A stretch of DNA of 62,906 nucleotides, the filler included, from Platydemus manokwari (taxonomy: Eukaryota): NCBI GenBank assembly GCA_037951405.1. It is 6 parts of 6 records of this genome, joined end to end, with 100 filler letters (N's around TTAATTAATTAA, not from the genome) between each part and the next. Parts side by side here need not be neighbours in the genome. Positions count along the whole stretch, not along the records: positions 9,218 to 23,233 come from JBBMOY011551411.1; 5 more parts are not named here. The stretch is one strand, 5' to 3'. Of the stretch, positions 9,218-23,233 are shown piece by piece. Position numbers and translations under genes: made by a program. The notes below the pieces were generated by a model. That model did no database searches. It was given only the letters and a program-made list of their open reading frames with translations, and was not told the DNA's origin. Each line of letters begins with the position of its first letter. The stretch's first letter is position 1.

Positions 9218-9326
9218 AGAAGGAATATTTGTTTAAATAATATTTAATATGAAAATATATTTTTTTATACTTAGTTATGAGTTGTGAATATAATTTAAAA
9301 AGCGATGAAGTGTTAGCCACTAACAG

Positions 9327-10099
9327 ATCTGAAAGTTATAGCTGAAACGTTTGAAAAAAATTACCAGCCTATTTATTATTTGGTCAATAGAAAAAGTAAG
9401 ATTTTAGAAAACGCTTTTAACAAATGTGATCTGATATCACCGGAAGAAATGAAAAGGTTAGAAAATATTCAAAATGGAAACCAAAATGTCTTCCAAAAGA
9501 AAACACGTATTTCCGACGAGACTAAATTGAAAGCTCTTGAAATGTATCAAAAGGGTATCTCATTGCAAGCGATTGCAGATAATTTTCAAACTTCTTATAC
9601 CAACGTTTGGTATTGGGTAAAACATTAAACTAATTTATTTGAAAAAGTGTCTAAAAATAATGATCAGATCACACTGGAAGAATTGAAAAGATTAGAAAAT
9701 GTTGTTAATGGAAACAGGCTTGACTTACCAACGAAAAGGTACAAAGTCTCCACCGATAATAAATTGAATTTCATTGAAATGGATGGATTAGCTCTCCAAG
9801 CAAAAGCGTCTTTTAAAAGCGTTGTCAAGAATGATTATAATTTCTTAGAAAATGGCATAAAGCACAATGATCAGATATCATTAAAGGATGGATCTGAATG
9901 TTTCGATTTGTCTGTAAATTTTATTAAATATGAAAGTGTATTGTTTGATGAACAGATAACAATAAACGAAAATGAAATGCAAGGATATTTTAATAGAAAA
10001 GAAAATACAAAAAGGAAGATAATGGACGCTGAAAATACAGATGAATTCAAGAAAATACGACTTGAATTTCCTATAAATATTAAATTGGAAGAAAAGTAA
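9327..10099 (+). pseudogene. Tandem-HTH array gene, paralog A (5'-truncated, in-frame TAA)
   Basis: ORFs 9380-9628 and 9647-10099 are in one frame, separated by a single TAA (9626-9628; AGA in paralog B). Reads DLKVIAETFEKNYQPIYYLVNRKSKILEN... then TRISDETKLKALEMYQKGISLQAIADNFQTSYTNVWYW, and ends ...KKIRLEFPINIKLEEK like paralog B. Confidence 0.85.
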
Positions 10100-11810
10100 T
10101 TGCAATGCTCTAATAGAGTATTGATATTTGGTAAATTACTTTAATTGTGTCACTTTAATCGAAATATTTAACTTAATTTGATAAATTTTAACTTATTCAC
10201 TGTGTTATTTAAGTTATTATGAAAGCTTTGATTTGAAAATAGAATGTTATACTTCACCAATGTTATTCGAAAGATTCTTAGTTATAAATACATTATTAAA
10301 TCATTTCAACGAAATTGAAATATAATTTTCATCTCTAAAATAGTTTTAGTATTTGAAAGAAAACATGAAATATTCAACATATATAAATTTACCGTTAAAC
10401 TTTAGAAAGAATGTCTTTTGAATTAATTTCCCAATTATGTAATTTAAATTATATAATTTTTTTAGATTTAATGTAAAATTAATTTTATGTCATCACAAAT
10501 CTGAAAAAACTTTTCACTTTTACCATGTTAATTTTAAATGTTGATTAGGATTAAAAAGAAACAGAAAAATAATAAATATTATAAAATATGTCAAAGTATA
10601 TTTTGTCAGGGGGATTTTCAATTCTTATCCGAATAATTCTACATGATTTTTGATTTTTTATATATAAAAATTTTTATTATAAACTCTTTACTTGTTTAAA
10701 AATCTTGTAATAATAATCGTATTTTAAATCTTTAATAACACAAACATTTACAATACTTTGTTTTTGAAAAATATTTGCAAAAAATTAGAGTATTTTTTAA
10801 TTTTCTACGAATAACAAAAGATATTTGATAAAAATGCATTACAGTTTATCAAATAATTGAGTTCTTATATATTTAATATTTTAAAAATTCCAGATTGAGT
10901 TTATTTTTCGACCACTATAATTCCTAAAACATTTTTTATCTGTTGATAGAACAAAGATTTTAAAATCGAGTATTGTGTTGATATTTATCATTAATTATTT
11001 GAGATAAAAGAATACTAAGATTTATTAAATTGGTTGCACAAAAAACATAGATGACAATAATTTTAAGTGTAAATGATGTTGTTTTAAAATCCTGATTTTT
11101 TTCAATTTCAATATTTTATTATTTTCAATTATGTAATTTTTAACGAATTATCAAAAGAGATTGTTTAAATAAATCAATAATTTAAAACCCTTTTCAAACA
11201 TAGGATTTTAACACTTTAGATGGATTTGCTTTGAAATATTTGATTCAATTTTCGAGCAACTGATTTGATAACAATACTCGGAATAGATTTTGAATTAATT
11301 TCGCGAGCCATGGTAAAAAACTCGATCTTCACTATTTCTTAAATGTATTGTTTCTGTTTAAATCTTGATTAATAAACTGTATTTGTATAACAACAAACGT
11401 CGTTGTATTGATTTGTGTATATTTTCTGAAAATATATAAAAAATCTCAATAAGTTCATCTCCTGTTCTAGTTAACTTTGAATAAAGGTCAGTATTTAAAG
11501 AATATTTAGAAATTTCACGAAATTCTTCGTCAGGCATTATTATTCAAACCATTAAAATAGTATCTCATGTAGATAAGGATGTACTTTGGATGAATTGATA
11601 TGTGACTTCTTTCTGATAGTACTGATATAAGTTATTTAGTTTTTAATGTTCCCTTGAAAAATTTAAGATATCTCGACACAAATTTCCTCTAAGCATCCAA
11701 TCTGTGAGGCCTTCCCGTTTTGTTATCTTGATTCCATACAATTTTGCCAATTCCTTCAAGAATCGTGAAATCCCATGTTGATGAAACGTTCCCGCCATTA
11801 TGAAATCCCA
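10100..11810. repeat. Downstream flank of paralog A, duplicated as 14082-14900 + 16067-16240 + 16831-16977
   Basis: Colinear matches, e.g. GTAATTGCAATG after both stop codons, CATGGTxAAAxACTCGATCTT at ~11308 and ~14881, GAATATTTAGAAATTTCACGAAATTCTTCGTCAGG at ~11500 and ~16073, and CCATACAATTTTGCCAATTCCTTCAAGAATCGTG at ~11734 and ~16905. Confidence 0.9.
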
Positions 11811-12353
11811 TGTGTTATTAAACATAACTGTAATTATCTAACTACATTTATAATTATAAAGAAATAAATTTAAAAACTCAAATAATTATATACGATTGCC
11901 GTGATTAGAATAGGAACTTGGTTTTGAAGCTATTTTGTCACTATTAGATATCTTAAAAAGGATACTTTTATAGAATTAAAGAATAAATCAAACATAGCAA
12001 TTGTATACATGAATTTATTTTATAAAATTGTCTCATGCACGAAATTTCATTATAACAAAAATCCTTTTTCTTGACTTAAGCCGTAAATTCTTATTCTAAA
12101 AGATTTTAAAAATAAATCGTTTGAAAACTTTTACAAAATAATAATATTAATAGTTAAAAATTAAAGGCAGTTTTAAAGACATTGAAGATTTTTTAAAATA
12201 ATATTGTTCTAAATCATTCTGACGTTATTTTATTAATATTTCTCTATTTATATTTAAAAATAATTTAGACCAATAGTATTATAAAGAAAAGAAATTCTTT
12301 TATTTATTGTTTTTTTTTAAATTGATAATTAATCGTATTATAAAAAGCATATC

Positions 12354-14081
12354 ATGCAAAATATATCAATGGAACATAATAGAGAATCAATTGACATTTA
12401 TAATGAAAAAATTAAGCTAAGCGAGACACGAAATAAATTCGAAACATCTTCTCAGCACATTATGTATTTAGTCAATAATGAAATTAAAGTGTCTGACGAA
12501 ACTGAACAAATAATGACAGAAGAAAATATTGTAAATCAAAATAAAGAAACTGCGCAAAATAAAAGAATTATTTATTCTTATAAAACTAAATTGAAAGCCA
12601 TTGAAATGTATCAAGAAGGATTTACGTTGCACGAAATTGCGAATAAATTTAAAACATCTTTCAATAATGTCTGGTATTGGGTAAATACTAAAAATAAGAT
12701 ATTAGAAAACGCGTTTAATAAATGTAATCAGTTATCATCAGAAGAAATAAAAAAGTTAGAAAATATTAAAAATGAAAAGGTAGATGTCTTACAAAGGAAA
12801 ACACGTATTTCTACCGAGACTAAATTGAAAGCTATTGAAATGTTTCAAAAAGGAATTGATCTTAAAGTTATAGCCGAAACGTTAAAAACAGGTTACAAGC
12901 AAATTTATTATTTAGTCCATAGAGAAAGTAAGATATTAGAAAACGCGTTTAAGAAATGTGATCAGTTATCACCAGAAGAAATGAAAAGGTTAGAAAATAT
13001 TAAAAATGGAAACCGAGATGTCTTCCAAAAAAAACCACGTATTTCCGCCGAGACTAAATTGAAAGCTATTAAAATGTATCAAGAGGGTATCTCATTGAAA
13101 GCGATTGGAAATATTTTGCAAGTCTCCTTCAACCAAGTTAGGTATTTGGTCAATAATAAAAATAAAATATTAGAAAAATTTCTTAAAAGAAGAGATCAGA
13201 TATCACCGGACGAAATGAAAAGGTTAGAAAATATTAAAAATGAAAACCAAAATGTCTTCCAAAAGAAAACACGTATTTCTGACGAGACTAAATTGAAAGC
13301 TGTTGAAATGTATCAAGAAGGATTTACGTTGCAAGAAGTTGCTAATAAATTTGAAACGTCTTACAACTATGTCTGGTGTTGGGTCAATAATAAAAATAAG
13401 ATTTTAGAAAATTTTGTTAAAAGCAGTGATCAGATATCACTGGACGAAATGAAAAGGTTAGAAAATATTAAAAATGGAAACCAAAATCTCTCCCAAAAGA
13501 AAACACGTATTTCTGACGAGACTAAATTGAAAGCTGTTGAAATGTTTCAAGAGGGTATCTCATTGAAAGCGATTGCAGATAATTTTCAAACATCCTTCAA
13601 CCACGTTTGGTATTGGGTAGAAAACAGAAGTAAAATATTTGAAAAAGTTGCTAAAAATAATGATCAGATCTCACTTGAAGAATTGAAAAGATTAGAAAAT
13701 GTTGTAAATGGAAACAGGCGTGAGTTACAAACGAAAAAGTGCAAAGTCTCTACAGATAATAAATTTAATTTTATTGAAATGGATGGATTAGCTTACCAAT
13801 CAAAACCCTGTCAGACAGATTATAAATTATTAGAAAAAGACATAAAACACAATGATCAGATATCATTAAAGGATGGATCAGAAAGTTTCGATTTACCTGT
13901 AAATTTATTGAAATATGAAAGTGTATGGTTTGATGAAATGTTAGTACAAAAGGAAAATGAAACGAAAGGAAATTGTAATAGAAAAAATACTAAGAGAAAA
14001 ATAACTGACACTGAAAATAAAAATGAATTCAAGAAAATACGACTTGAATTTCCTATAAATATAAAATTGGAAGAAATGTAA
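12354..14081 (+). CDS. Intronless 575-aa protein with five tandem 78-aa repeats, each containing a CENP-B-N/psq-like helix-turn-helix (paralog B, intact)
   Basis: Open 1728-bp frame in AT-rich DNA. Repeat starts at 12801, 13035, 13269 and 13503 (period 234 bp), plus one upstream copy. The motif (Y/I)SxETKLKAIEMYQEGxxLxxIAxxFxTSxxxVxxWVxNKxKI resembles the N-terminal HTH of pogo/Tigger/CENP-B proteins. No DDE domain is visible. Confidence 0.9.
   Translation: MQNISMEHNRESIDIYNEKIKLSETRNKFETSSQHIMYLVNNEIKVSDETEQIMTEENIVNQNKETAQNKRIIYSYKTKLKAIEMYQEGFTLHEIANKFKTSFNNVWYWVNTKNKILENAFNKCNQLSSEEIKKLENIKNEKVDVLQRKTRISTETKLKAIEMFQKGIDLKVIAETLKTGYKQIYYLVHRESKILENAFKKCDQLSPEEMKRLENIKNGNRDVFQKKPRISAETKLKAIKMYQEGISLKAIGNILQVSFNQVRYLVNNKNKILEKFLKRRDQISPDEMKRLENIKNENQNVFQKKTRISDETKLKAVEMYQEGFTLQEVANKFETSYNYVWCWVNNKNKILENFVKSSDQISLDEMKRLENIKNGNQNLSQKKTRISDETKLKAVEMFQEGISLKAIADNFQTSFNHVWYWVENRSKIFEKVAKNNDQISLEELKRLENVVNGNRRELQTKKCKVSTDNKFNFIEMDGLAYQSKPCQTDYKLLEKDIKHNDQISLKDGSESFDLPVNLLKYESVWFDEMLVQKENETKGNCNRKNTKRKITDTENKNEFKKIRLEFPINIKLEEM
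12567..13736 (+). repeat. Five tandem 234-bp coding repeats
   Basis: Blocks such as GAGACTAAATTGAAAGCT and GAAAAGGTTAGAAAATATTAAAAATG recur at an exact 234-bp period. Confidence 0.95.
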
Positions 14082-17036
14082 TTGCAATGTTCCAATAGAT
14101 CATTGATATTTGCTAAATTACTTTAATTATGTCACTTCAATCGGAATATTTAAATATAGTTTAGAATAATGTCTTTTGGATATTATAAAATATTATAAAA
14201 TATTTGTTATTATCTCAAATATACGAAAAAATATGTCAAAGTAGATTTTATAAACAAATTCTCAATTCATATCAAAATAATTCTACATGATTTTTGATTT
14301 TGCAAATATAAAATCTTTAATTATAAATAAAGTTTGTAAACTCATTACATGTTTAATAATTTTCTTAAATGTTTAATAACAAAAAAATTAACAATGACTT
14401 TTTTTTAAAAATGATTTCAAATCTTTACAGTATTTTCCAGTTTTCCTCAAATAAAATAAGATGTTTGGATAAATTACATTTTGACTTACATTTATCCATT
14501 TATCAAATATTGAAGTTCTTGTGTATTTAATATTTTATTTCTTACAAATAAGAGATACAAAACTTTATTTTAAAAATTCAAGGTTGAGTTTATTTTGTGA
14601 CCACTACAAATTTTTAATAAGGACAATATTTTTAAAATCGAGTATTGTGTTGATATTTATCATAAATAATTCGAGATAAAAGAATTTTTATAACTTCGAT
14701 ATTTTCAATTATATAATTTTTAACGGATCATCAAATAAGATTGTTTAAATAAAGCGATAATTTAAAACCTGAATTATTCAAAACACTGAATTTTAACATT
14801 TGATTCGATTTTCGAGCAGCAGATCCTAGCTTCAATTCCTTTGATAACATTAACCTCAATAGATGTAGAATTAAACGGGTCATGGTGAAACACTCGATCT
14901 TGATTGTGTTAGCTATTAGTAAAGAACGGATTCAATAAAAAAAACTAACAATTCCAACATGAAAATGTTTTTTTTAAGAAATAAGAGAAAGACGAAATCA
15001 ATTGATGTTTTTGTTGTTTCTCTCATGAAAACCCTCCACAACTACTACTACGACTATATTAATGGTAATTGTAAAATTAAAGTTAGATCCAATTCATCCG
15101 TGACCTTTCACTTTTGGACTCTGAAGGTATTTTCTAACTCACTTTTTTAATCTTGCTTTTGAACATTCAAAATATACTCGACATTTGTCCATTTCTTTTG
15201 CTTGGCTTGACAATCCAAAACCTTTTCCAAATGTCGCACATAAATATCTGTAGTGTCTGCTGCGTTTGTAATTGAAATTTTTTCAGTACTTATTTTCTCA
15301 ATAGAAATTAAGGTTCTAGATGATATTTTCTTTGATTGCCAATAATACTCCTGATCTTCAAAAATTTATCGATAAAGTTGTTGAAATAACGGAATGGGCT
15401 AGTTTACAATAGTGTCCAAACAAATTTGATTTATCACACAAAACCATAATGATGTAATATCTATTAATAATGTAAATATTAAAAGATTGTTGAATAAAGA
15501 ATTTCACATGTATCCTGGTGTCCTTGTTAGTGATAAAAATGATCTCGTGAATTTTAAATTTAATTTTGTATTAGCGGCGGTAAATATCATATTTTTTACG
15601 TAAAAATACTTAAAATCTTTCAAAATTTCAAAGAAAGAAATTTCATAAACTAATCCATCAAATAATGTAAAAAAATGCAATATTTATATTTTACGAAGTA
15701 CGAGTATCTATCAAAGTGCAAATATCACGAATTATTATCAATTTAATTGTTCTAGTAATCTTATTTTGAACCCTATATCTTGTTCTGTTATTAAATTGAC
15801 ATGCCTCTTGAATTTTCAAAAAACTTAACAACGTAAATTATTTTATATAAATAGCAATATCAAGTTGACAGCTTTTTTAGTCAATAAGTTGATTAGATAT
15901 TAAGAGAAAAGGAATATTTTAAATACATCTTTGCAAAATATAGTTGAAAAATATTAAATAACTTTTTGAAAAATTTGTTTTTTTAAACGAATCGTAAGGA
16001 AAAGATGTAATAAAGTTTTATTAAAGCAAAATTATAATACAATGAATGAGTAATAATAATTCAGAGTTTAAAGAATATTTAGAAATTTCACGAAATTCTT
16101 CGTCAGGAATATCATTATTAATCAAACCGCAAAAATAGTATTTAAAGTAGATAATGATGTACTTTGGATGAATTGATATGTAACTTCTTTTTGATAGTAC
16201 TGGTATAAGTTATTTAGTTTTTAATGTTCTCTTGCAAAAGGTAATGATTATATTTCATTGAAATTAAGAAAGTTATTAATTTTGTAAAGATCACATAATA
16301 AATTACAATTTTTGATTAAATTATTTATTAATAACTTATCTTCAGACATAATATTATCAAGTTATGTTTCAATATTTCAATATTTATTGTACTTCAGAAT
16401 ATTTGAAGGGTCTTTATTTGTAATTTTGCTTTTGTGTAATATATATAATATCATAACAGTATATTTTTATAAATTCTATAATATGACCAGAGAGTCGAGC
16501 TTACATTATTACCCAACAATTACATTTTAGTGTTATAAAATAAAATTTAAAATAAAATCCAATGAAACCGTGCAATCTGGTATGTCACTATGGGTTTATT
16601 TCAATACAAACACGCACTACCGAAACCTGATGCGTACAAACCTGTTAAAAGACTCACATTACTTTGTTATTAGTCACCAATCGATGTTATCAATCAAAAT
16701 AGAATCGGGAATAATAAAGATTTGAATAATTTGCACTTATTATATTTAACTATCTCAAGAATAGTGGCATTATTGTAATACCTATTTAAACAAATCTCAA
16801 ACTAAATTATTACTTGAAATTATGTTTATGAATTTAAGATATCTCGACACAAATTTTCTCTAAGTATCCAATCTGAGAGGCCCTCCTGTTTTGTTATCTC
16901 GATCCCATACAATTTTGCCAATTCCTTCAAGAATCGTGTAATCCCATGTTGATAAAACGTTCACGCCATTATGAAATAATCAGGAAAGCAAAACCGAAAT
17001 CGCTATTAGCGACCATTTCGAATTTTGGTAGAATAA

Positions 17037-17730
17037 TCATATACTACTATTCATATACGTAACCATAACCATGATGGTCAAATATGTCTTATATCCTTTG
17101 CCAATTTTAATTTTATACTTGAAAATTCTCACTCTATCTAGAACTTTATATTTTGAGTTATTATTTAAATCATTATTAATATTATTCCATCCCTTTATTT
17201 TTTCTTTTATTATTTCATGGTTTTTGCTTGCGTCTACAGGAGTAACCCCAATATTTGAATGAATTTTATTATTATATTTTTTTAACAACACTTTGCAATA
17301 AATTATAATTCCATTTTGATTTCTCTCAACCGTAAAATGTTTCCACAAAATATTTTTTAAAGTTCTAATAAATATTTCTGCAAAAACAAAGTGAGTCATT
17401 TAAAAAAATAATTATATTCTTTATATTTAATATTATTTTGTTTAAATATTGTTGTCGGAATGAGATATTGCGATACCAGTTTAACCGAAATATTCTTGGA
17501 AATATGTTAATGTAATGAATGTAATACATAGTAATACATTTCTATGTTGATATTGACATTGTTTTAGTTGTCATAGTTTTAATTAAATTAAATACTAGTG
17601 CTCCAGAATATTCAAAATTAAGTTTGAATATATTCGTTTCACATTAACCAATAAAATTATTACGAATAAAATTAATTCTACATCACGAATTATTTGAACT
17701 ATTTTAATTGTTTCAGGCTCATGTAAATGT
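17037..17730 (-). mobile_element. Polinton/Maverick retroviral-type integrase relic
   Basis: AEIFIRTLKNILWKHFT...YNNKIHSNIGVTP...KYKVLDRVRIFKYKIKIGKGY matches the Maverick integrase C-terminal pattern (AERFNRTLK...YNN..HSSI..TP...KFKVGD.VRISK.K..F.KGY). The upstream part is decayed (LHEP near 17725). Confidence 0.85.
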
Positions 17731-19099
17731 GACTAACTAACAATTGTTAATGCTTGATAAGTTATAAGTAATATCAAGCTCATCAAATTATTTTGCTAAT
17801 TAAATCCATCATATGAATAACAATTCTTAGCCTAATCATAATCTTCGATCATTTAGAGATTCGATTTGCCTGAAAAAAGTAGTCACTGGGTAATAAAAAT
17901 ATCGAACAGAGAATCTAGGAACCAGTTTGAGAATTTTTATTGAAGTGAATTTTATGAATTGAACATAATATGAAATTGAAAATGAAATTTATTAAACAAT
18001 TAAATTGATAACCTCTTAAAATTGGATTTTAAATTTTCAGATTTCATTCAATAAATATGGTGTTAGCGCACACTTTAAAAATCTCAAAGATTCGAATTGA
18101 AATTATTCAACATGTTTTCCTAATAATAACATCACATAAACTTATGGATTATTATTTTATTAAAGAATATAATTAAATAAACTGTTTATAATTTTACGAC
18201 AATTTAAAACTATCATTTGGGACCTATTTTTGGCTAAATTTTGGACCAATTCTTCTAAATAAATTTATAATAAAAATATAAATTAAACGATAAATTCTTA
18301 TTGACTGTTTAATAAAACAATCAGTGATTAAATAAAATAACAATAATAATAACAATTATTACCTCAGATGAAGTTCACTGTATTGTAAGTTCATTGTTTT
18401 GATATTTTGTGCGGCTCATTAATTGTGGGTTTTTTAAGATATTTTCTGTTGAACAATTCAAAGAGACAGAATTCTTTATTTTGCAAAATATTCAGATTAA
18501 ACAATAATTATAATTCATTTAGTAAATAAAAATAGTTTCAATTAAATTTTAATAACTATTTAAATATTAATTTTACGTTACAAATAAATGTTTCAAATAA
18601 AATAGCTCATTTTCCGATTTTTGTTGAGAAATTTTAATTTTATTTTGTTAAAATACTGTTGGGATAAACATCAGCATTATATAGTATAAAAAACAAACAT
18701 TATATAGTATAAAATACAACAACATTATATTAAAAATGAGGATAATACTCCATTATTATAATAGTCCATTATTTGAAAATAATTAACAATTAAATAATAT
18801 ACCATGTTCTATTATTAGATTAACAAAATAGTTATTCTAAAAATACAATGATAAAAAATTAGGATTTAAAATGGCAATAAATAAATAAATAAATGGAATC
18901 ACTGAAATTTGAAGATAAAAAGGGCAAAAAATAAATAAATGGAAAATTAATTTGAAAATAGAAATAAAAAACAACAAAAATAAACCACGAAAAATAAATT
19001 AATAAAAGAAAAAGTTTTAAAGCAAGTAAAAATTGAAAGAAACACAATTTTTCTAATATACTATACAACGAATCTTTCAAATCCAAACGAAATTAAGAA

Positions 19100-19476
19100 A
19101 ACTCTAATTAAGAGGAAATCGATCATTATTGTCAAAAATTAAGCATTATTGTCAAACTATTATCTTGGAATCAACAATTTTGCGAATCGTATGAATTCCC
19201 AAAAGGATAATTACCATTATTGACGATTATCTACAATTGACGGAGGAAATAAATTATTTCAGTCTCTGTGAACAATCCATTAGTCACGAAGAAGATAAAA
19301 TATCTATAAATTATCTAATTTCATATCTAAGTTCAAGCAATAAAACTGGTATAAAAACACAAAGGAACAGAAGAAGAAGAGAAAAACTATATAACTCTGA
19401 ATTGTTTGTTCAACTCCTCACATTGGCATCTCCAATACTAATTCTATTCGACAAAATCAAGAATACTGCTTTCTGA
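19100..19476 (+). mobile_element. Probable decayed Polinton small basic (core/pX-like) protein
   Basis: FCESYEFPKG*LPL followed (across frameshifts) by a basic stretch and LFVQLLTLASPILILF. This resembles, from memory, the ICEC..N.LKGN.PL...GGFL..LL..PIL small protein of Mavericks/adintoviruses, and it lies between the integrase and pPolB relics. Confidence 0.4.
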
Positions 19477-20467
19477 AAACTTAAGGAAAAACGGGAAAAT
19501 AGTAAGCCTTATTATACAGTAATACTTTTCTTGTTGAGAAATATTTTATTGTTCAAAAATCTTTTATAAATTAACCATATTCTTTAACTTGAATACGTAT
19601 CATTTTAATCTATGATAAACATTATTGCATATTTAATATCAGTGAATTTGTCTACTATTTGAGTTAAATTACGTAATGTCATTTATAGCTGAATTGATAA
19701 AATCAATAAACACATTATTTCTCATAAGCTTGTGCTATAGAAATGTTCGGTTGGATACTAATGCAGCTTGCTCAAAATTATAATTCCTCTATAAGTACAT
19801 TTCTATATAGCTTATTAGGTTTATCGACGTACAAATTTTATAAAGCCTTAATTTAAAGTTACTTAGAAAGAGTAATCATTTATAAAATCAAAGCTATAAA
19901 CAACTGTATACAGGTATCATTTGCGTTAGTATAATCGACACGTTTTGAACAGCTTAATTCTTAAAATGGTTTGAATTGTTATCTTTTAAAAATGTCATTT
20001 TGAAGAAACGTGATTTTGTAAAAATCTTTCTATAAAAGAGTCTTTGACAACAGCATGTCAGTAAAAGAGGATTTTATCTATATTTTAATTACCAAAACAA
20101 TAATACTAAATGTCACAAAATTGATAATCATTTATTTTGAAATTAGATACCGAACACTCACTATTATTGATTATGATAATGTGTATATGAATCAACTCTT
20201 TCGTTTATAATTATAATTTACCTGATTTCTACTTTAATAATACAATCACAATGAAAAAATTGAATTTCAGTTGATAGAAGATATCAAATAAAAAAATTAG
20301 AACGAGTACCAACATTTTTAAATATTCCTATATTTCTACAAAATAATCAATTATTAGTAACTCGTATTTCGACAGATAAAAATTAAGAAACAACAGAATA
20401 GAAAATTAAGAAAAAAATAAAAACAGGAAAATCACAAAACCAAAATATGAAAACCCTATTAAAAAAA

Positions 20468-21950
20468 ACTTATAAATGCCAAATTTTCGATACGATGTTT
20501 AAAGTGATTCATGCTCTAAAAGTTCATGAAAAATCCAAAAAACATATTGCGAAATATAACGCTTTTATTAATATTTAAAACAATAATAAAACAATAGATA
20601 ACAGCAATACAATTAATGAAATTTCGTTTTCATCAAATATGGGTAATACTTATAAAACCCATAAAATTAAAATAAAAATCTCAACCAACTCAGAAAGATA
20701 ATTTATCATATTTCAGAAGAGTTTAAGGAAATATTAAAATTTCTTAATAAATATCTAGAACATAAATTTCAAAAAATGATCAAAATATTATTACAAAAAA
20801 TAAATCCACATACTGAAGAAATTTAATATACAACTATAAAATTATTTACAGATCATATATTAAAAATTGGATTGGAGAATATTATGGGTGACGACCTAGT
20901 AAATAATTTAAGATTTCTCCGAACACTGAGATAATGATTAAATGAGAGTTCAAGAAAGTGGATGGAGTATATTTGAATTATGTAATATAATAGTAAATAT
21001 TTCAAGTGTAAATGTTTTTTTAGAAGTAATTACTTACCCCTTACAGTTGTCTCTAATAACATAATAAATATGCAAAACTATGATAACAAATGTTTCTTTT
21101 TTTCAGTATTAGCCATTTTATATCCAATAAAAGGATACAGACGTGCAAATAGTGCAAGCCATTATAAAAAATATTTTGATAAATTAAATCTTGAACAAAT
21201 ATCTTTTCCAACACCTTTAAATGATATTAAAAAATTTCATAGAAAGAATAATGTTTATGGAATTAAAGTAAATGGAAATGGAAATAAGAATTACCAATTA
21301 TTTCCAATCTATATTTCCAAGAAAGAACAATATCCTCAAGATATTAAACTTTCATATTTAGAAAATAATGGAGTAACGCTCTATGCTTTCATTAAAAATT
21401 TCAATTGACTAATGCAGGGACAACTAACTTATAAATGAAATTCAAACCAAAGATTAAATTTTTGTGATAAATGTTGTTATTATTTTGTAACAGAAAATAA
21501 CTTTGAAAATCATTAGAGAATATTTAGAAAAAATGGTGAGGTAATCTCACGATTGTTAAGCCCAGCCAACATAATAATAAACGATGTTCGGTCTATGGCA
21601 ATATCTTAAAATGTATTAATTATAACCATCAAATACCAGTTTCTTTTATAATTATTGCTGATATAGAATGTGTGAATATCAAAAGGTAAAGCAACAAAGG
21701 TTTTAACTAATCAAATACTCATTTGAATTTATTTAAAATATATTTTAAGCTATTCAGAAATAATAGAAAACGAGAATAAATTATTTCAAGAAGAAAACTG
21801 CGTGCAAGAGTTTCTTAAATAGATAGAAGATAATGAAAATAAATTTGAAATTAATCTGAACGAACAAGACAAAATAAACTTTAATAATTCAACTAATTGT
21901 ACTGATTGTAATAAAATCTTTTCTGGTGATAAATAATGATTATTATTTAA
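20468..21950 (+). mobile_element. Polinton/Maverick protein-primed DNA polymerase B, N-terminal relic
   Basis: Degenerate C2H2 finger (YKCQIFD...HEKSKKH), VQESGWSI, NMQNYDNKCFFFSVLAILYP, LNLEQISFPTPLNDIKKF, FCDKC, PVSFIIIADIEC (exonuclease-I-like YADFE) and TNCTDCNKIF. Multiple stops and frameshifts. Confidence 0.85.
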
Positions 21951-21954
21951 AGAA

Positions 21955-22480
21955 AATAAGTTAGGAAATGTGTCGATGATACGAGTAAGATAATACAAAA
22001 AATGTCTAAAAGCAGTGAACAGATATGACCGGAACAAATGAAAGATTAGAAAATATTATTAACAAGCGAGATTTACGAAAAAGAAAATGTGAAGTTACTA
22101 AAGATAATAAATTTAAATCTATCGAAATGGATAGAGATGCGACGGCGTTGCAAGCCATTGCAGAAAAATCGAAATTTTCTTTCAAAACAATTTTTTAGGA
22201 AAATAGTAAATTATCAGAAATAGGTAATGATAATGAATATTTGTCTTTACTTGCAAATTTAATTTAAAAAGAAAATAAATTGTTTAATGAAACCAAACCA
22301 TTGGAATTGATTATTGATGAAATGGAAAGAAAATTGCTTGGAAAACCTATTTTATTAGCATTTAGTAACAATGCTAGAAAAGAAAATAAAAACAAGAAAA
22401 ATATATAGCATTGAAAATCTAAATGAATTGAAGGAAATACGACTTAAATTTTCTTTAAATTTAAAATTGGAGTTATTTAA
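21955..22480 (+). pseudogene. Tandem-HTH array gene, paralog C (decayed 3' part)
   Basis: VRKCVDDTSKIIQKMSKSSEQI*PEQMK/RLENIINKRDLRKRKCEVTKDNKFKSIEMD...ALQAIAEK and C-terminal ELKEIRLKFSLNLKLE are homologous to the last repeat and tail of paralog B; the 3' flank AATAGATCA is also shared. Confidence 0.8.
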
Positions 22481-23233
22481 TTACAATAATGCAATAGATC
22501 ACTAATTAATTTGTTGTTTTTCTAAAAATTTTAATCAGTTTTAATACAAATATTAATCTTTAATGCTTGAATAAAAGTTTTTTTCAAATTTTTTTTCCAA
22601 ATTTTAAATGCGAGATATCAACAGGAGTTTTATATAGAAATAGAATATATTTGATGATTTATAGATGTTTTTTTAAGAAAATGAAAGATTTTCGTCTATC
22701 GGATTGGAAATTCAAGCTTGGGTTGTAGCATACTATCAGAATATATGCTGTTAAGCTGAAGCATCACAACAATATGACTTTCTCATTGGATAACCTGTAT
22801 GACAAAGGCGTTTCAAACTGAAATTCTCTTTTAATTTATAAAAAAATACATAATTAAAATCTATGAAAATTCAATCAAATGGTGCAAGAGATTTTTCTGA
22901 AAATTGATGTGATGATTTGATGTTATCTTTAATAATTTTTATTTTACTCGATTAAGTAAGTCAAGTCAACTAAATCGAGTCAACTTACTGAAGACTTTTT
23001 ATTGCAGAATATGATGGTGAATGTAATTATTTCTCTAAAAATTGAAGAGAGTCGAAATGAAATGTACTTATTTGTAAAGTTCACCCAAATAATTTGAGTA
23101 GTTGTTGAAAGGCTATATTTTTTTCAACCATTTTTACAATTTTTATCAGTTTTATCTATAATAATACTTTTAATTTTTTATTTTTTAAAATAACATCTCT
23201 TTATTGTTTCATTAGATCTTTCTATTTTAAATT

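What the first reader, a model, noticed from the sequence alone, without database searches (positions are those of the whole stretch)
9327..22480. Three same-strand paralogs with different module content: birth-and-death cluster
Seen: paralog A joins a module-2-like unit directly to a module-5-like unit (modules 3-4 absent) and has one in-frame TAA; B is intact with five modules; C is an older decayed 3' fragment that retains ALQAIAEK in the sixth position, where B has lost it and A keeps only ALQA. A and B share about 1.7 kb of downstream flank, showing segmental tandem duplication. Inference: both gene number and module number evolve by unequal exchange, as expected for an evolving array-type recognition system.
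Basis: partly seen in the sequence, partly recalled or inferred. Interest (0 to 1): 0.7.

Follow-up and report, generated by a model that had tools for sequence, protein, structure and literature searches.

The report
Expanding family of tandem helix-turn-helix genes
This stretch of an AT-rich animal genome holds one intact and two broken copies of a gene built from repeated DNA-binding (helix-turn-helix) modules; they belong to a family of at least 50 such genes that gains and loses both genes and modules and shares its own promoter motif.

Summary
B (12354-14081) is an intact 575-aa ORF with five full 78-aa modules. A (9326-10099) is an in-register hybrid of a module-2-like and a module-5-like unit with an in-frame TAA. 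C (21958-22725) is a decayed 3' fragment.

Three corrections:
- A's 5' edge is the end of a young high-copy repeat at the contig start, so its upstream half is unknown.
- C belongs to another subfamily, 83% identical to an intact gene on contig C1365872. It is cut exactly where a 1.6-kb interspersed repeat ends.
- The trio is part of a family with 89 matches on about 60 contigs, including intact ORFs of 313-716 aa with 3-6 near-full modules.

Each module is a basic arm, a three-helix HTH (Pfam HTH_23, CENP-B_N) and a two-helix spacer. The exposed recognition-helix positions are the most variable. All ten members checked carry an invariant CCAAT-box motif 89-94 nt before the ATG, and the motif is almost private to the family.

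The best reading is a lineage-specific family of modular DNA-binding proteins evolving by birth and death and by unequal exchange. An arms-race "recognition system" is not shown: dN/dS among recent paralogs is 0.45-0.96, and 0.42 at the recognition positions. No close relatives or literature were found.

The parts
9218..9326 (.). 3' end of a young high-copy interspersed repeat. It abuts paralog A in mid-module and sits at the contig start.
   Evidence: 40 scored copies match query bases 1 to about 108-111 at 88-99% (most 95-99%) and stop there; 724 first-look candidates.
9326..10099 (+). Paralog A. It comprises the last 64 codons of a module-2-type unit (whose 3' third is m3/m4-like), a module-5-type unit, a degenerate sixth unit and the conserved tail. 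There is an in-frame TAA at 9626-9628. Probable pseudogene.
10100..11806 (+). 3' flank of A. 10100-10862 is shared with the flanks of paralogs on C1963824 (81%) and C1298428 (71%). 10583-11806 is shared in blocks with B's flank.
11815..12100 (+). Copy of a 250-300-nt high-copy repeat. It forms the sharp 5' boundary of the B-type duplication unit and is also found upstream of the paralogs on C1296317, C1259320 and C1972179.
   Evidence: 2641 first-look candidates; matches begin at query base 1644 = window 11815.
12210..12353 (+). Proximal promoter/5' leader conserved across the whole family. The CCAAT-box motif ATTTAGACCAATAGTATT is at 12263-12281, 91 nt before the ATG.
12354..14081 (+). Paralog B, an intact 575-aa gene. 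It has a degenerate N-terminal module (about residues 12-71), five full HTH modules (12582-12815, 12816-13049, 13050-13283, 13284-13517, 13518-13751), a degenerate sixth unit, a basic stretch and a C-terminal ...FPINIKLEEM.
14228..16977 (+). B's 3' flank. Blocks 14228-14901, 16061-16239 and 16831-16977 are homologous to A's flank and are separated by inserted repeats.
17086..17390 (-). High-copy repeat of about 300 nt. The ORF at 17040-17399 (-) looks like an integrase C-terminal fragment by eye, but Pfam did not confirm this.
   Evidence: about 40 copies at 82-89%.
20374..21959 (+). Interspersed repeat of about 1.6 kb with consistent ends. Its 3' end coincides with the 5' truncation point of paralog C.
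21958..22725 (+). Paralog C, a decayed 3' fragment of a different subfamily. It is 83% nt-identical to the intact gene on C1365872, with at least 2 frameshifts and at least 4 stops. Shared 3' flank continues to about 23229.

Best explanation
The piece holds three members of a lineage-specific multigene family of an AT-rich, non-arthropod animal.

The proteins. Each is a chain of 78-aa modules. A module has a short basic arm (..KKTRIS..), a three-helix helix-turn-helix of the transposase/paired/CENP-B type, and a two-helix spacer (DQISxEExKRLENI). A conserved N-terminal degenerate module and a conserved basic C-terminal tail frame the chain. The tail ends in a psi-K-x-E motif.

Likely function (inferred). 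Each HTH reads a few base pairs through the exposed face of helix 3, so an array of 3-6 near-full modules recognises a long composite DNA site. The proteins would then act in the nucleus as sequence-specific regulators or repressors. A family-specific CCAAT-box promoter drives the genes, so they are probably co-regulated.

How the family evolves (shown):
- Segmental and tandem duplication of a unit made of promoter, gene and 3' flank.
- In-register unequal exchange between modules, which changes module number and creates hybrid modules.
- Death by nonsense and frameshift mutations and by repeat insertion.

In this window B is the live gene. A and C are dying or dead copies of two other sublineages.
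For: Shown:
- B is a 575-codon ORF in DNA of about 24-29% GC. My arithmetic from that composition puts the chance of 575 stop-free codons at about 1e-22.
- Pfam: HTH_23 E 1.7e-24 with 5 stretches; also HTH_28, HTH_7, HTH_Tnp_1 and CENP-B_N above their cut-offs.
- An AF2 model of one module, built with 69 family modules, has pLDDT above 93 for residues 1-40 and helices at 2-11, 16-22, 27-35, 37-48 and 53-70.
- The HTH core superposes on IstA transposase, resolvase, RcsB and Pax5 at rmsd 0.6-1.5 A over 33-38 residues. It also matches CENP-B (Z 5.1), Brinker (Z 4.6) and sigma region 4 (Z 5.5).
- B has pI 9.2 and basic inter-module arms.
- Column entropy is highest at helix-3 positions 27, 28, 29, 31 and 35, while positions 30 and 32-34 are conserved hydrophobic residues. 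There are 63 distinct five-residue signatures in 69 modules.
- Family size: 89 tblastn matches on about 60 contigs, with intact ORFs of 313-716 aa and 3-6 near-full modules.
- dN/dS among close paralogs is 0.45-0.96.
- Modules are orthologous across paralogs at 84-94% nt, against 70-80% within a gene.
- Hybrid modules stay in exact register.
- The promoter block is conserved at 69-88% nt even between members only 35-50% identical in protein, with an invariant TTTAGAC(C/A)AAT core 89-94 nt before the ATG.
- That 19-mer has 16 genome hits against 3 for the reversed control, and at least 10 of them lie directly upstream of family ORFs.
Against: - There is no expression, binding or localisation evidence.
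- Whole-gene omega of about 0.65 is high for a conserved regulator. At the presumed base-contact positions omega is 0.42 between recent paralogs, though only 55 codons were compared. Neither strong constraint nor diversifying selection is demonstrated.
- The whole-protein AF2 model was poor (pLDDT 44.7), so the geometry of the array is unknown.
- Structural matches are weak in absolute terms: Foldseek E >= 0.3 and Z <= 5.5, which is usual for a 40-residue domain.
- The HTH type is the one used by transposases, and the neighbourhood is full of repeats.
- The organism was not identified.
Confidence: 0.6

Rival explanations
1. The genes are cargo or accessory ORFs of a mobile element. In this view a DNA transposon, or a transduction unit that begins with the 250-300-nt high-copy repeat at 11815, is what copies them, and the 'family' is a transposon family rather than host genes.
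For: - The HTH type is typical of transposases.
- Four B-type paralogs share homology that begins exactly at the start of a high-copy repeat.
- The loci sit among repeats.
- One related metagenome protein is named 'transposase-like' by its source.
Against: - No member carries a DDE, recombinase or other catalytic domain.
- Copies are few, about 60 contigs against hundreds to thousands of first-look candidates for the real repeats nearby, and they are deeply diverged at 35-86% aa.
- Divergent members keep the ORF, the N- and C-terminal regions and a private CCAAT promoter at a fixed distance.
- Flanks beyond the unit differ between paralogs, and the self-comparison shows no direct copy of the 11815-12100 repeat downstream of B, so there is no LTR-like arrangement. 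Inverted repeats were not searched.
- A boundary at a dispersed repeat is also what repeat-mediated ectopic recombination would give.
Confidence: 0.15
2. The arrays are not sequence-specific transcription factors. They would instead be structural chromatin proteins that bind a repeated DNA such as a satellite, centromeric or telomeric repeat, in the manner of CENP-B or Pipsqueak binding to repeats. Alternatively they use the HTH repeats as a protein or RNA scaffold.
For: - Similarity to CENP-B_N (Z 5.1).
- Regular spacing of identical-length modules.
- Relaxed omega and rapid turnover, as seen for satellite-binding proteins.
Against: - The 63 different helix-3 signatures in 69 modules are more than binding to one repeat needs.
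- No satellite with matching periodicity was seen in the piece.
- Nothing here tests RNA or protein binding.
Confidence: 0.15
3. Assembly artefact: A and B are haplotypes or a mis-joined or collapsed repeat rather than two neighbouring loci.
For: The assembly is extremely fragmented, with 1,989,153 contigs of mean length about 460 nt. The contig begins inside a repeat. No reads could be laid.
Against: - A and B differ by about 15% in nucleotides and by two whole modules.
- Their flanks carry different insertions.
- Each has a closer or equally close relative on another contig.
- The two lie 2.2 kb apart on one gap-free contig (no N in the piece).
- Modules within B differ by 20-30%, which is too much to collapse.
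Confidence: 0.05

Closest known systems
Pipsqueak / psq-type and CENP-B-type HTH proteins (Drosophila Psq with four tandem psq repeats; CENP-B, Brinker, Distal antenna)
   Same: They use tri-helical HTHs of transposase ancestry as host DNA-binding domains, sometimes in tandem. The module matches Pfam CENP-B_N (32 bits against a cut-off of 21.2). Structurally it matches CENP-B, Brinker and Dan (Z 4.6-5.1).
   Different: HTH_psq itself is not among the Pfam matches at E <= 1. The module here is 78 aa with its own two-helix spacer. There are 3-6 near-full modules (up to 7 module-profile matches) rather than 1-4, no BTB or other partner domain, and dozens of paralogs with variable module number. 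The statement about Psq's four repeats is from my own knowledge.
Bipartite DNA-binding domains of Tc1/mariner and IS630 transposases and the Pax paired domain
   Same: The pattern is the same: basic arm, helix 1 (..KLKAIEMY..G), helix 2 (..IA..F) and recognition helix (..V.YWV). Pfam matches include HTH_23, HTH_28, HTH_Tnp_1, HTH_7 and, weakly and below its cut-off, HTH_SB. The core fits the IstA, resolvase and Pax5 HTHs at rmsd 0.6-1.5 A.
   Different: There is no catalytic domain, and more than two HTHs in series. The genes have a conserved host-type CCAAT promoter.
KRAB/C2H2 zinc-finger gene clusters (functional analogy only)
   Same: Both are tandem arrays of small DNA-reading modules with variable contact residues. 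Both show gene clusters, module gain and loss by unequal exchange, and many pseudogenes.
   Different: The fold is different. There is no effector domain such as KRAB. No evidence of positive selection at contact positions was found, and no known targets.
Uncharacterised pure HTH_23 arrays in metagenome proteins (P0001-P0015)
   Same: The architecture is the same, with 4-15 tandem HTH_23-like units and nothing else. P0001 aligns module for module with B at 27% identity. Some AT-rich eukaryote-like ones (P0004, P0029) also end in psi-K-x-E motifs.
   Different: Their modules are 55-65 aa and lack the DQISxEExKRLENI spacer. The best score is 230 bits for 6 modules. Several are bacterial, for example two on a 2.66-Mb contig and one fused to ankyrin repeats. 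None carries a name that says more than 'transposase-like protein'.

Membership tests
Pfam HTH_23 (PF13384), homeodomain-like/transposase-type HTH | Score above the curated gathering cut-off (24.6 bits) | tested here: met
   85.3 bits, E 1.7e-24, 5 separate stretches in B.
Pfam HTH_23 (PF13384), homeodomain-like/transposase-type HTH | Three-helix bundle with helix-turn-helix geometry | tested here: met
   helices 2-11, 16-22 and 27-35 at pLDDT above 93; rmsd 0.6-1.5 A to solved DNA-bound HTHs over 33-38 residues.
CENP-B N-terminal DNA-binding domain (PF04218) | Score above the gathering cut-off (21.2 bits) | tested here: met
   32.1 bits, E 8.9e-8, 2 stretches. CENP-B 1hlv Z 5.1, 52 residues aligned, rmsd 3.3.
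Pipsqueak family (PF05225 HTH_psq) | Match to the psq HTH profile | tested here: not met
   One search lists 18 families at E <= 1 and HTH_psq is not among them.
DDE/Tc1-mariner or IS630 transposases | A catalytic DDE domain after the HTHs | tested here: not met
   One search shows no DDE family in B. Searches show family ORFs consisting of modules plus a short tail only.
Transposable element (any class) | Terminal repeats, target-site duplication and many near-identical copies | tested here: inconclusive
   The self-comparison shows no direct copy of the 5' repeat downstream of B; inverted repeats were not searched. Copies are 35-86% identical. The unit's 5' edge does coincide with a high-copy repeat. 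Empty sites could not be looked for.
Sequence-specific DNA-binding transcription regulators | Demonstrated DNA binding and nuclear localisation | not testable with these tools
   Only indirect evidence: pI 9.2, basic arms and a KRK-rich tail.
NF-Y (CCAAT-box) dependent promoters | A conserved CCAAT pentamer with flanks at about -60 to -100 | tested here: met
   AGAC(C/A)AAT is invariant in 10 of 10 members, 89-94 nt before the ATG; 16 genome hits against 3 for the control. Binding by NF-Y itself was not tested, and the transcription start is unknown.

The most novel reading that the evidence does not exclude
An animal lineage has built, from a transposase-type HTH, a large family of programmable-looking DNA readers. 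These are arrays of 3-6 near-full modules whose helix-3 contact residues differ from module to module. The arrays are reshuffled by in-register exchange, and one private CCAAT promoter switches the family on together. This would be a helix-turn-helix counterpart of KRAB zinc-finger clusters, perhaps aimed at the transposons that fill this genome.
Probability: 0.3. Interest if true: 0.7.

Novelty: new variant of a known kind. Interest (0 to 1): 0.5.

Why it matters
Modular DNA readers whose specificity can be recombined, such as zinc fingers and TALEs, are rare and have been scientifically and technically fruitful. A natural family of HTH arrays with fixed-length modules would offer a new system for asking how long DNA sites are read by chained HTHs. 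The family shows clear module orthology, dozens of paralogs and visible module swapping. It would also show how new regulator families arise from transposase parts. The private, invariant CCAAT promoter makes the regulation of the whole family directly testable. If instead the genes prove to be silent or mobile-element cargo, the finding is an ordinary repeat family.

Tried and rejected
The TAA at 9626, haplotype or collapse artefacts, and expression are all untested.
- Protein look-ups: the word-indexed search found nothing at E <= 1e-3 among 8000 candidates. The exact sequences of B and two paralogs are not in the 15-billion collection. The ESM Atlas gave only weak bacterial leads of at most 0.80. 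PDB by sequence gave nothing relevant.
- Structure: the AF2 model of whole B without an alignment was too poor to use (pLDDT 44.7).
- RNA genes and bacterial signals: Rfam and tRNA scans of the piece were empty. The bacterial promoter/terminator scan gave chance level, 17 against 17.9 expected, and is irrelevant for a eukaryote.
- Literature: searches for tandem HTH arrays, HTH_23 and family peptides found no description of this family.
- Neighbouring repeat ORFs: Pfam did not confirm my reading by eye of them as integrase, protein-primed polymerase or ATPase. Only one ORF, on another contig, gave a weak rve match below cut-off.
- Organism: it is an animal, with 149 scored rhodopsin-type GPCR matches, most in a single open frame. 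It is not an arthropod, with one cuticle-protein hit on a 271-nt contig. No actinoporin was found. Two let-7 hairpins score just under Rfam's cut-off on short contigs that look GC-richer by eye than the AT-rich genome, so they may be native or contaminant. A hydrozoan fits the GC of 24.7-25.4% reported for Hydra in PMC7642931, but the family's absence from public proteomes argues against a well-annotated species. A planarian-like flatworm remains possible. Not resolved.
- Rejected idea: TAA as a sense codon (ciliate-type code). B and its paralogs use CAA/CAG for Gln and end in TAA.


Full report
**What is there**

The piece (window 9218-23233) is contig C1551411 of a 911-Mb assembly in 1,989,153 contigs. 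It has no N and a GC content of 19-30%.

The only long ORF is B, 12354-14081 (+), 575 aa. Its centre is a 234-nt tandem array: TRF gives 4.8 copies at 78% matches. This array encodes five 78-aa modules.

A module profile built from B also matches a degenerate unit in B's N-terminal 70 residues and a degenerate sixth unit after module 5.

A (9326-10099) lies in one frame with a single TAA at 9626-9628, where B has AGA.

C (21958-22725) can only be read by changing frame twice, and it holds at least four stops.

These include ALQAIAEK in C, ALQA in A and its loss in B.

**Checking the module claim**

I built a maximum-likelihood tree of 18 modules from A, B and three close paralogs.
- A's partial first unit falls in the module-2 clade (100/100), nearest to module 2 of the C1963824 gene.
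- A's second unit falls in the module-5 clade (100/99).

An in-register sliding comparison refines this. A's first unit is m2-like for its first 150 nt, then 94-97% identical to B's m3/m4. It is therefore a hybrid created by exchange between modules in exact register, removing two modules.

The same arrangement exists in an ORF-intact paralog. A 9326-10862 is colinear with C1963824 at 84.9% over 1.58 kb. The event is therefore older than A.

Other paralogs show further rearrangements. C1296317 carries m2-m3-m2'-m4-m5. C1298428 carries m2'-m4-m5. Module 3 of C1963824 is a chimera of an F-type 5' part and a last-type 3' end.

Orthologous modules in different genes are 84-94% identical in nucleotides, more than modules within one gene (70-80%). 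There is thus little concerted homogenisation.

**Corrections to the picture**

1. Window 9218-9326 is the terminal 108-111 nt of a repeat found at 95-99% identity in many places (724 first-look candidates). A therefore starts at a repeat junction that is also the contig end. Whether A has more modules upstream cannot be known from this assembly.

2. C is not an older copy of the A/B lineage.
   - It is 83% identical in nucleotides to the 3' part and flank of an intact 313-aa-frame gene on C1365872. It also resembles one on C1127774.
   - Its 5' end coincides to the base with the 3' end of a 1.6-kb interspersed repeat, 20374-21959. That repeat has consistent termini in dozens of copies at 70-83% identity.
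   - The missing 5' part of C is not found upstream of the repeat.

3. A and B are head-to-tail units. A's flank homology with B's flank ends at 11806 (B: 16977), and B's unit begins at 11815.
   - The A/B flank match is 68-72% in 10583-11329 and 89-93% in 11488-11806.
   - B's flank holds two insertions made of other repeats.
   - The 5' edge of the B-type unit is sharp at 11815 in four paralogs. It is the start of a 250-300-nt high-copy repeat.
   - This fits duplication by ectopic recombination between dispersed repeats. It also keeps a mobile-element reading alive.

**The family**

B finds 89 matches on about 60 contigs of its own genome. Many are open frames of 313-716 aa with 3-6 near-full modules (up to 7 module-profile matches), at 35-86% identity.

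They share an N-terminal region beginning MQ.IS.... The C-terminal tail also recurs in diverged members: basic residues followed by ..R L E/D F P. N I/L K L E E.

In DNA this AT-rich a 575-codon open frame is not expected by chance. My arithmetic gives about 0.086 stops per codon, so P is about 1e-22. Pairwise dN/dS among close paralogs is 0.45-0.96. This indicates constraint, but a weak one.

**What the module is**

- Pfam: HTH_23 (E 1.7e-24, five stretches), HTH_28, HTH_7, HTH_Tnp_1 and CENP-B_N are all above their cut-offs.
- With 69 family modules as the alignment, AlphaFold gives a confident three-helix HTH at residues 1-40 (pLDDT above 93). A fourth helix and a less certain fifth follow.
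- The core superposes on DNA-bound HTHs of IstA transposase, resolvase, RcsB and Pax5 at 0.6-1.5 A.
- By VIA-align it matches sigma region 4 (Z 5.5), CENP-B (Z 5.1), Brinker and Distal antenna (Z 4.6). These values are modest, as expected for 40 residues, and show fold only.
- B has pI 9.2, and the inter-module arms are basic.
- Across 69 modules the most variable structured positions are 27, 28, 29, 31 and 35, the exposed face of helix 3. Positions 30 and 32-34 stay hydrophobic.
- There are 63 different five-residue signatures.
- Between orthologous modules of recent paralogs these positions are not changing faster than silent sites (omega 0.42 over 55 codons). Only the unstructured linker reaches 1.2.

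So module types differ in their presumed contact residues. Each type is kept after duplication. That fits a modular DNA reader and gives no sign of an ongoing arms race.

**An unexpected regulatory signature**

The 140 nt before the ATG are alignable even between members whose proteins are only 35-50% identical.

An alignment of ten members shows an invariant TTTAGAC(C/A)AAT core, a CCAAT box. It lies 89-94 nt before the ATG. A second block, AAATCATT, lies about 35 nt further upstream.

In the whole 911-Mb assembly the 19-mer, with at most one mismatch, occurs 16 times against 3 for the reversed control. At least 10 of the 16 lie directly upstream of family ORFs.

This argues that these are host genes with their own shared promoter.

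**Relatives elsewhere**

- The word-indexed search found nothing, and the exact proteins are not in the public collection.
- A profile of the module, run with HMMER over 1.84 billion representatives, found 1195 proteins at E <= 1e-3 and 10 at E <= 1e-30.
- The ten top hits scanned against Pfam showed only HTH-type matches, with 9-15 module stretches in most, on metagenome contigs. Some are clearly bacterial.
- The nearest, P0001, aligns module for module with B at 27% identity but has 62-aa modules without the family's spacer.
- Some AT-rich eukaryote-like hits also end in psi-K-x-E motifs.

So the architecture recurs in nature and is uncharacterised. This 78-aa family appears confined to the window's lineage. 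I found no paper describing it.

A Hydra genome paper reports over-representation of HTH_23, HTH_28, HTH_7 and Sigma70_r4-type Pfam hits in Hydra and ascribes them to transposases (PMC7642931). Whether arrays like these contribute there is unknown.

**Organism**

- It is an animal: 149 scored rhodopsin-type GPCR matches, most in a single open frame.
- It is not an arthropod.
- No actinoporin was found.
- Two let-7 hairpins score just below Rfam's threshold on short contigs that look GC-richer by eye, so they may be native or contaminant.
- I could not name the species.

**Verdict**

The amendments concern A's 5' edge, C's subfamily and the genome-wide scale.

The functional reading is an inference from fold, charge, variability pattern and promoter. 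It proposes modular, nuclear, sequence-specific DNA-binding proteins. I put it at about 0.6. Mobile-element cargo and repeat-binding chromatin protein are the main rivals.

Noticed in passing
window 12263-12281 (and upstream of paralogs, e.g. L043 5176-5194 in contig coordinates): Family-private CCAAT-box motif ATTTAGACCAATAGTATT at a fixed 89-94 nt before the ATG. It has 16 genome hits against 3 for the control, mostly upstream of family ORFs. A second conserved block, AAATCATT, lies about 35 nt further upstream.
   Followed up: yes
window 14031-14078 and the C-termini of paralogs (L013, L014, L019): The conserved C-terminal tail ends in ..FPINIKLEEM. I-K-L-E fits the psi-K-x-E SUMO-acceptor consensus and is preceded by KRK-rich stretches. 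Distant metagenome relatives P0004 and P0029 also end in V/I-K-K-E-P. The SUMO reading is my inference and was not tested.
   Followed up: partly
window 9218-9326: End of a very young interspersed repeat (95-99% identical copies, 724 first-look candidates). Its type was not determined.
   Followed up: partly
window 11815-12100: High-copy repeat of 250-300 nt (2641 first-look candidates, copies 77-83%) that marks the exact 5' edge of the B-type duplication unit in four paralogs. It may be the substrate for ectopic recombination.
   Followed up: partly
window 20374-21959; L027 4448-5618: Interspersed repeat of 1.6 kb with an ORF (21070-21408). Next to its copy in L027 is an ORF with a ..YMDTDS.. 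motif reminiscent of protein-primed family-B polymerases. Pfam gave no match, so this is only a lead.
   Followed up: partly
window 17040-17399 (-): 120-aa ORF inside a 300-nt high-copy repeat. By eye it resembles the C-terminal end of a retroelement integrase; Pfam gave no match.
   Followed up: partly
P0002, P0005, P0007 (metagenome proteins): Bacterial-looking proteins made of 8-12 near-identical HTH_23 units. One is fused to ankyrin repeats, one begins with a hydrophobic N-terminal stretch that looks like a signal peptide, and two lie on one 2.66-Mb contig. This looks like an uncharacterised class of prokaryotic HTH arrays.
   Followed up: no
L045 (C33760, 271 nt); L046, L047 (276 and 278 nt): A single arthropod-type cuticle-protein fragment, and two let-7 hairpins with the canonical mature sequence, on short contigs. 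The let-7 contigs look GC-richer by eye than the AT-rich genome. These may be contaminant (food?) DNA or native loci; unresolved.
   Followed up: partly
L012 (C1963824), inside the ORF: The closest intact relative of A has an assembly gap (33 X in translation) between two nearly identical F-type modules, so its true module number is uncertain. The gap was left as it is.
   Followed up: no
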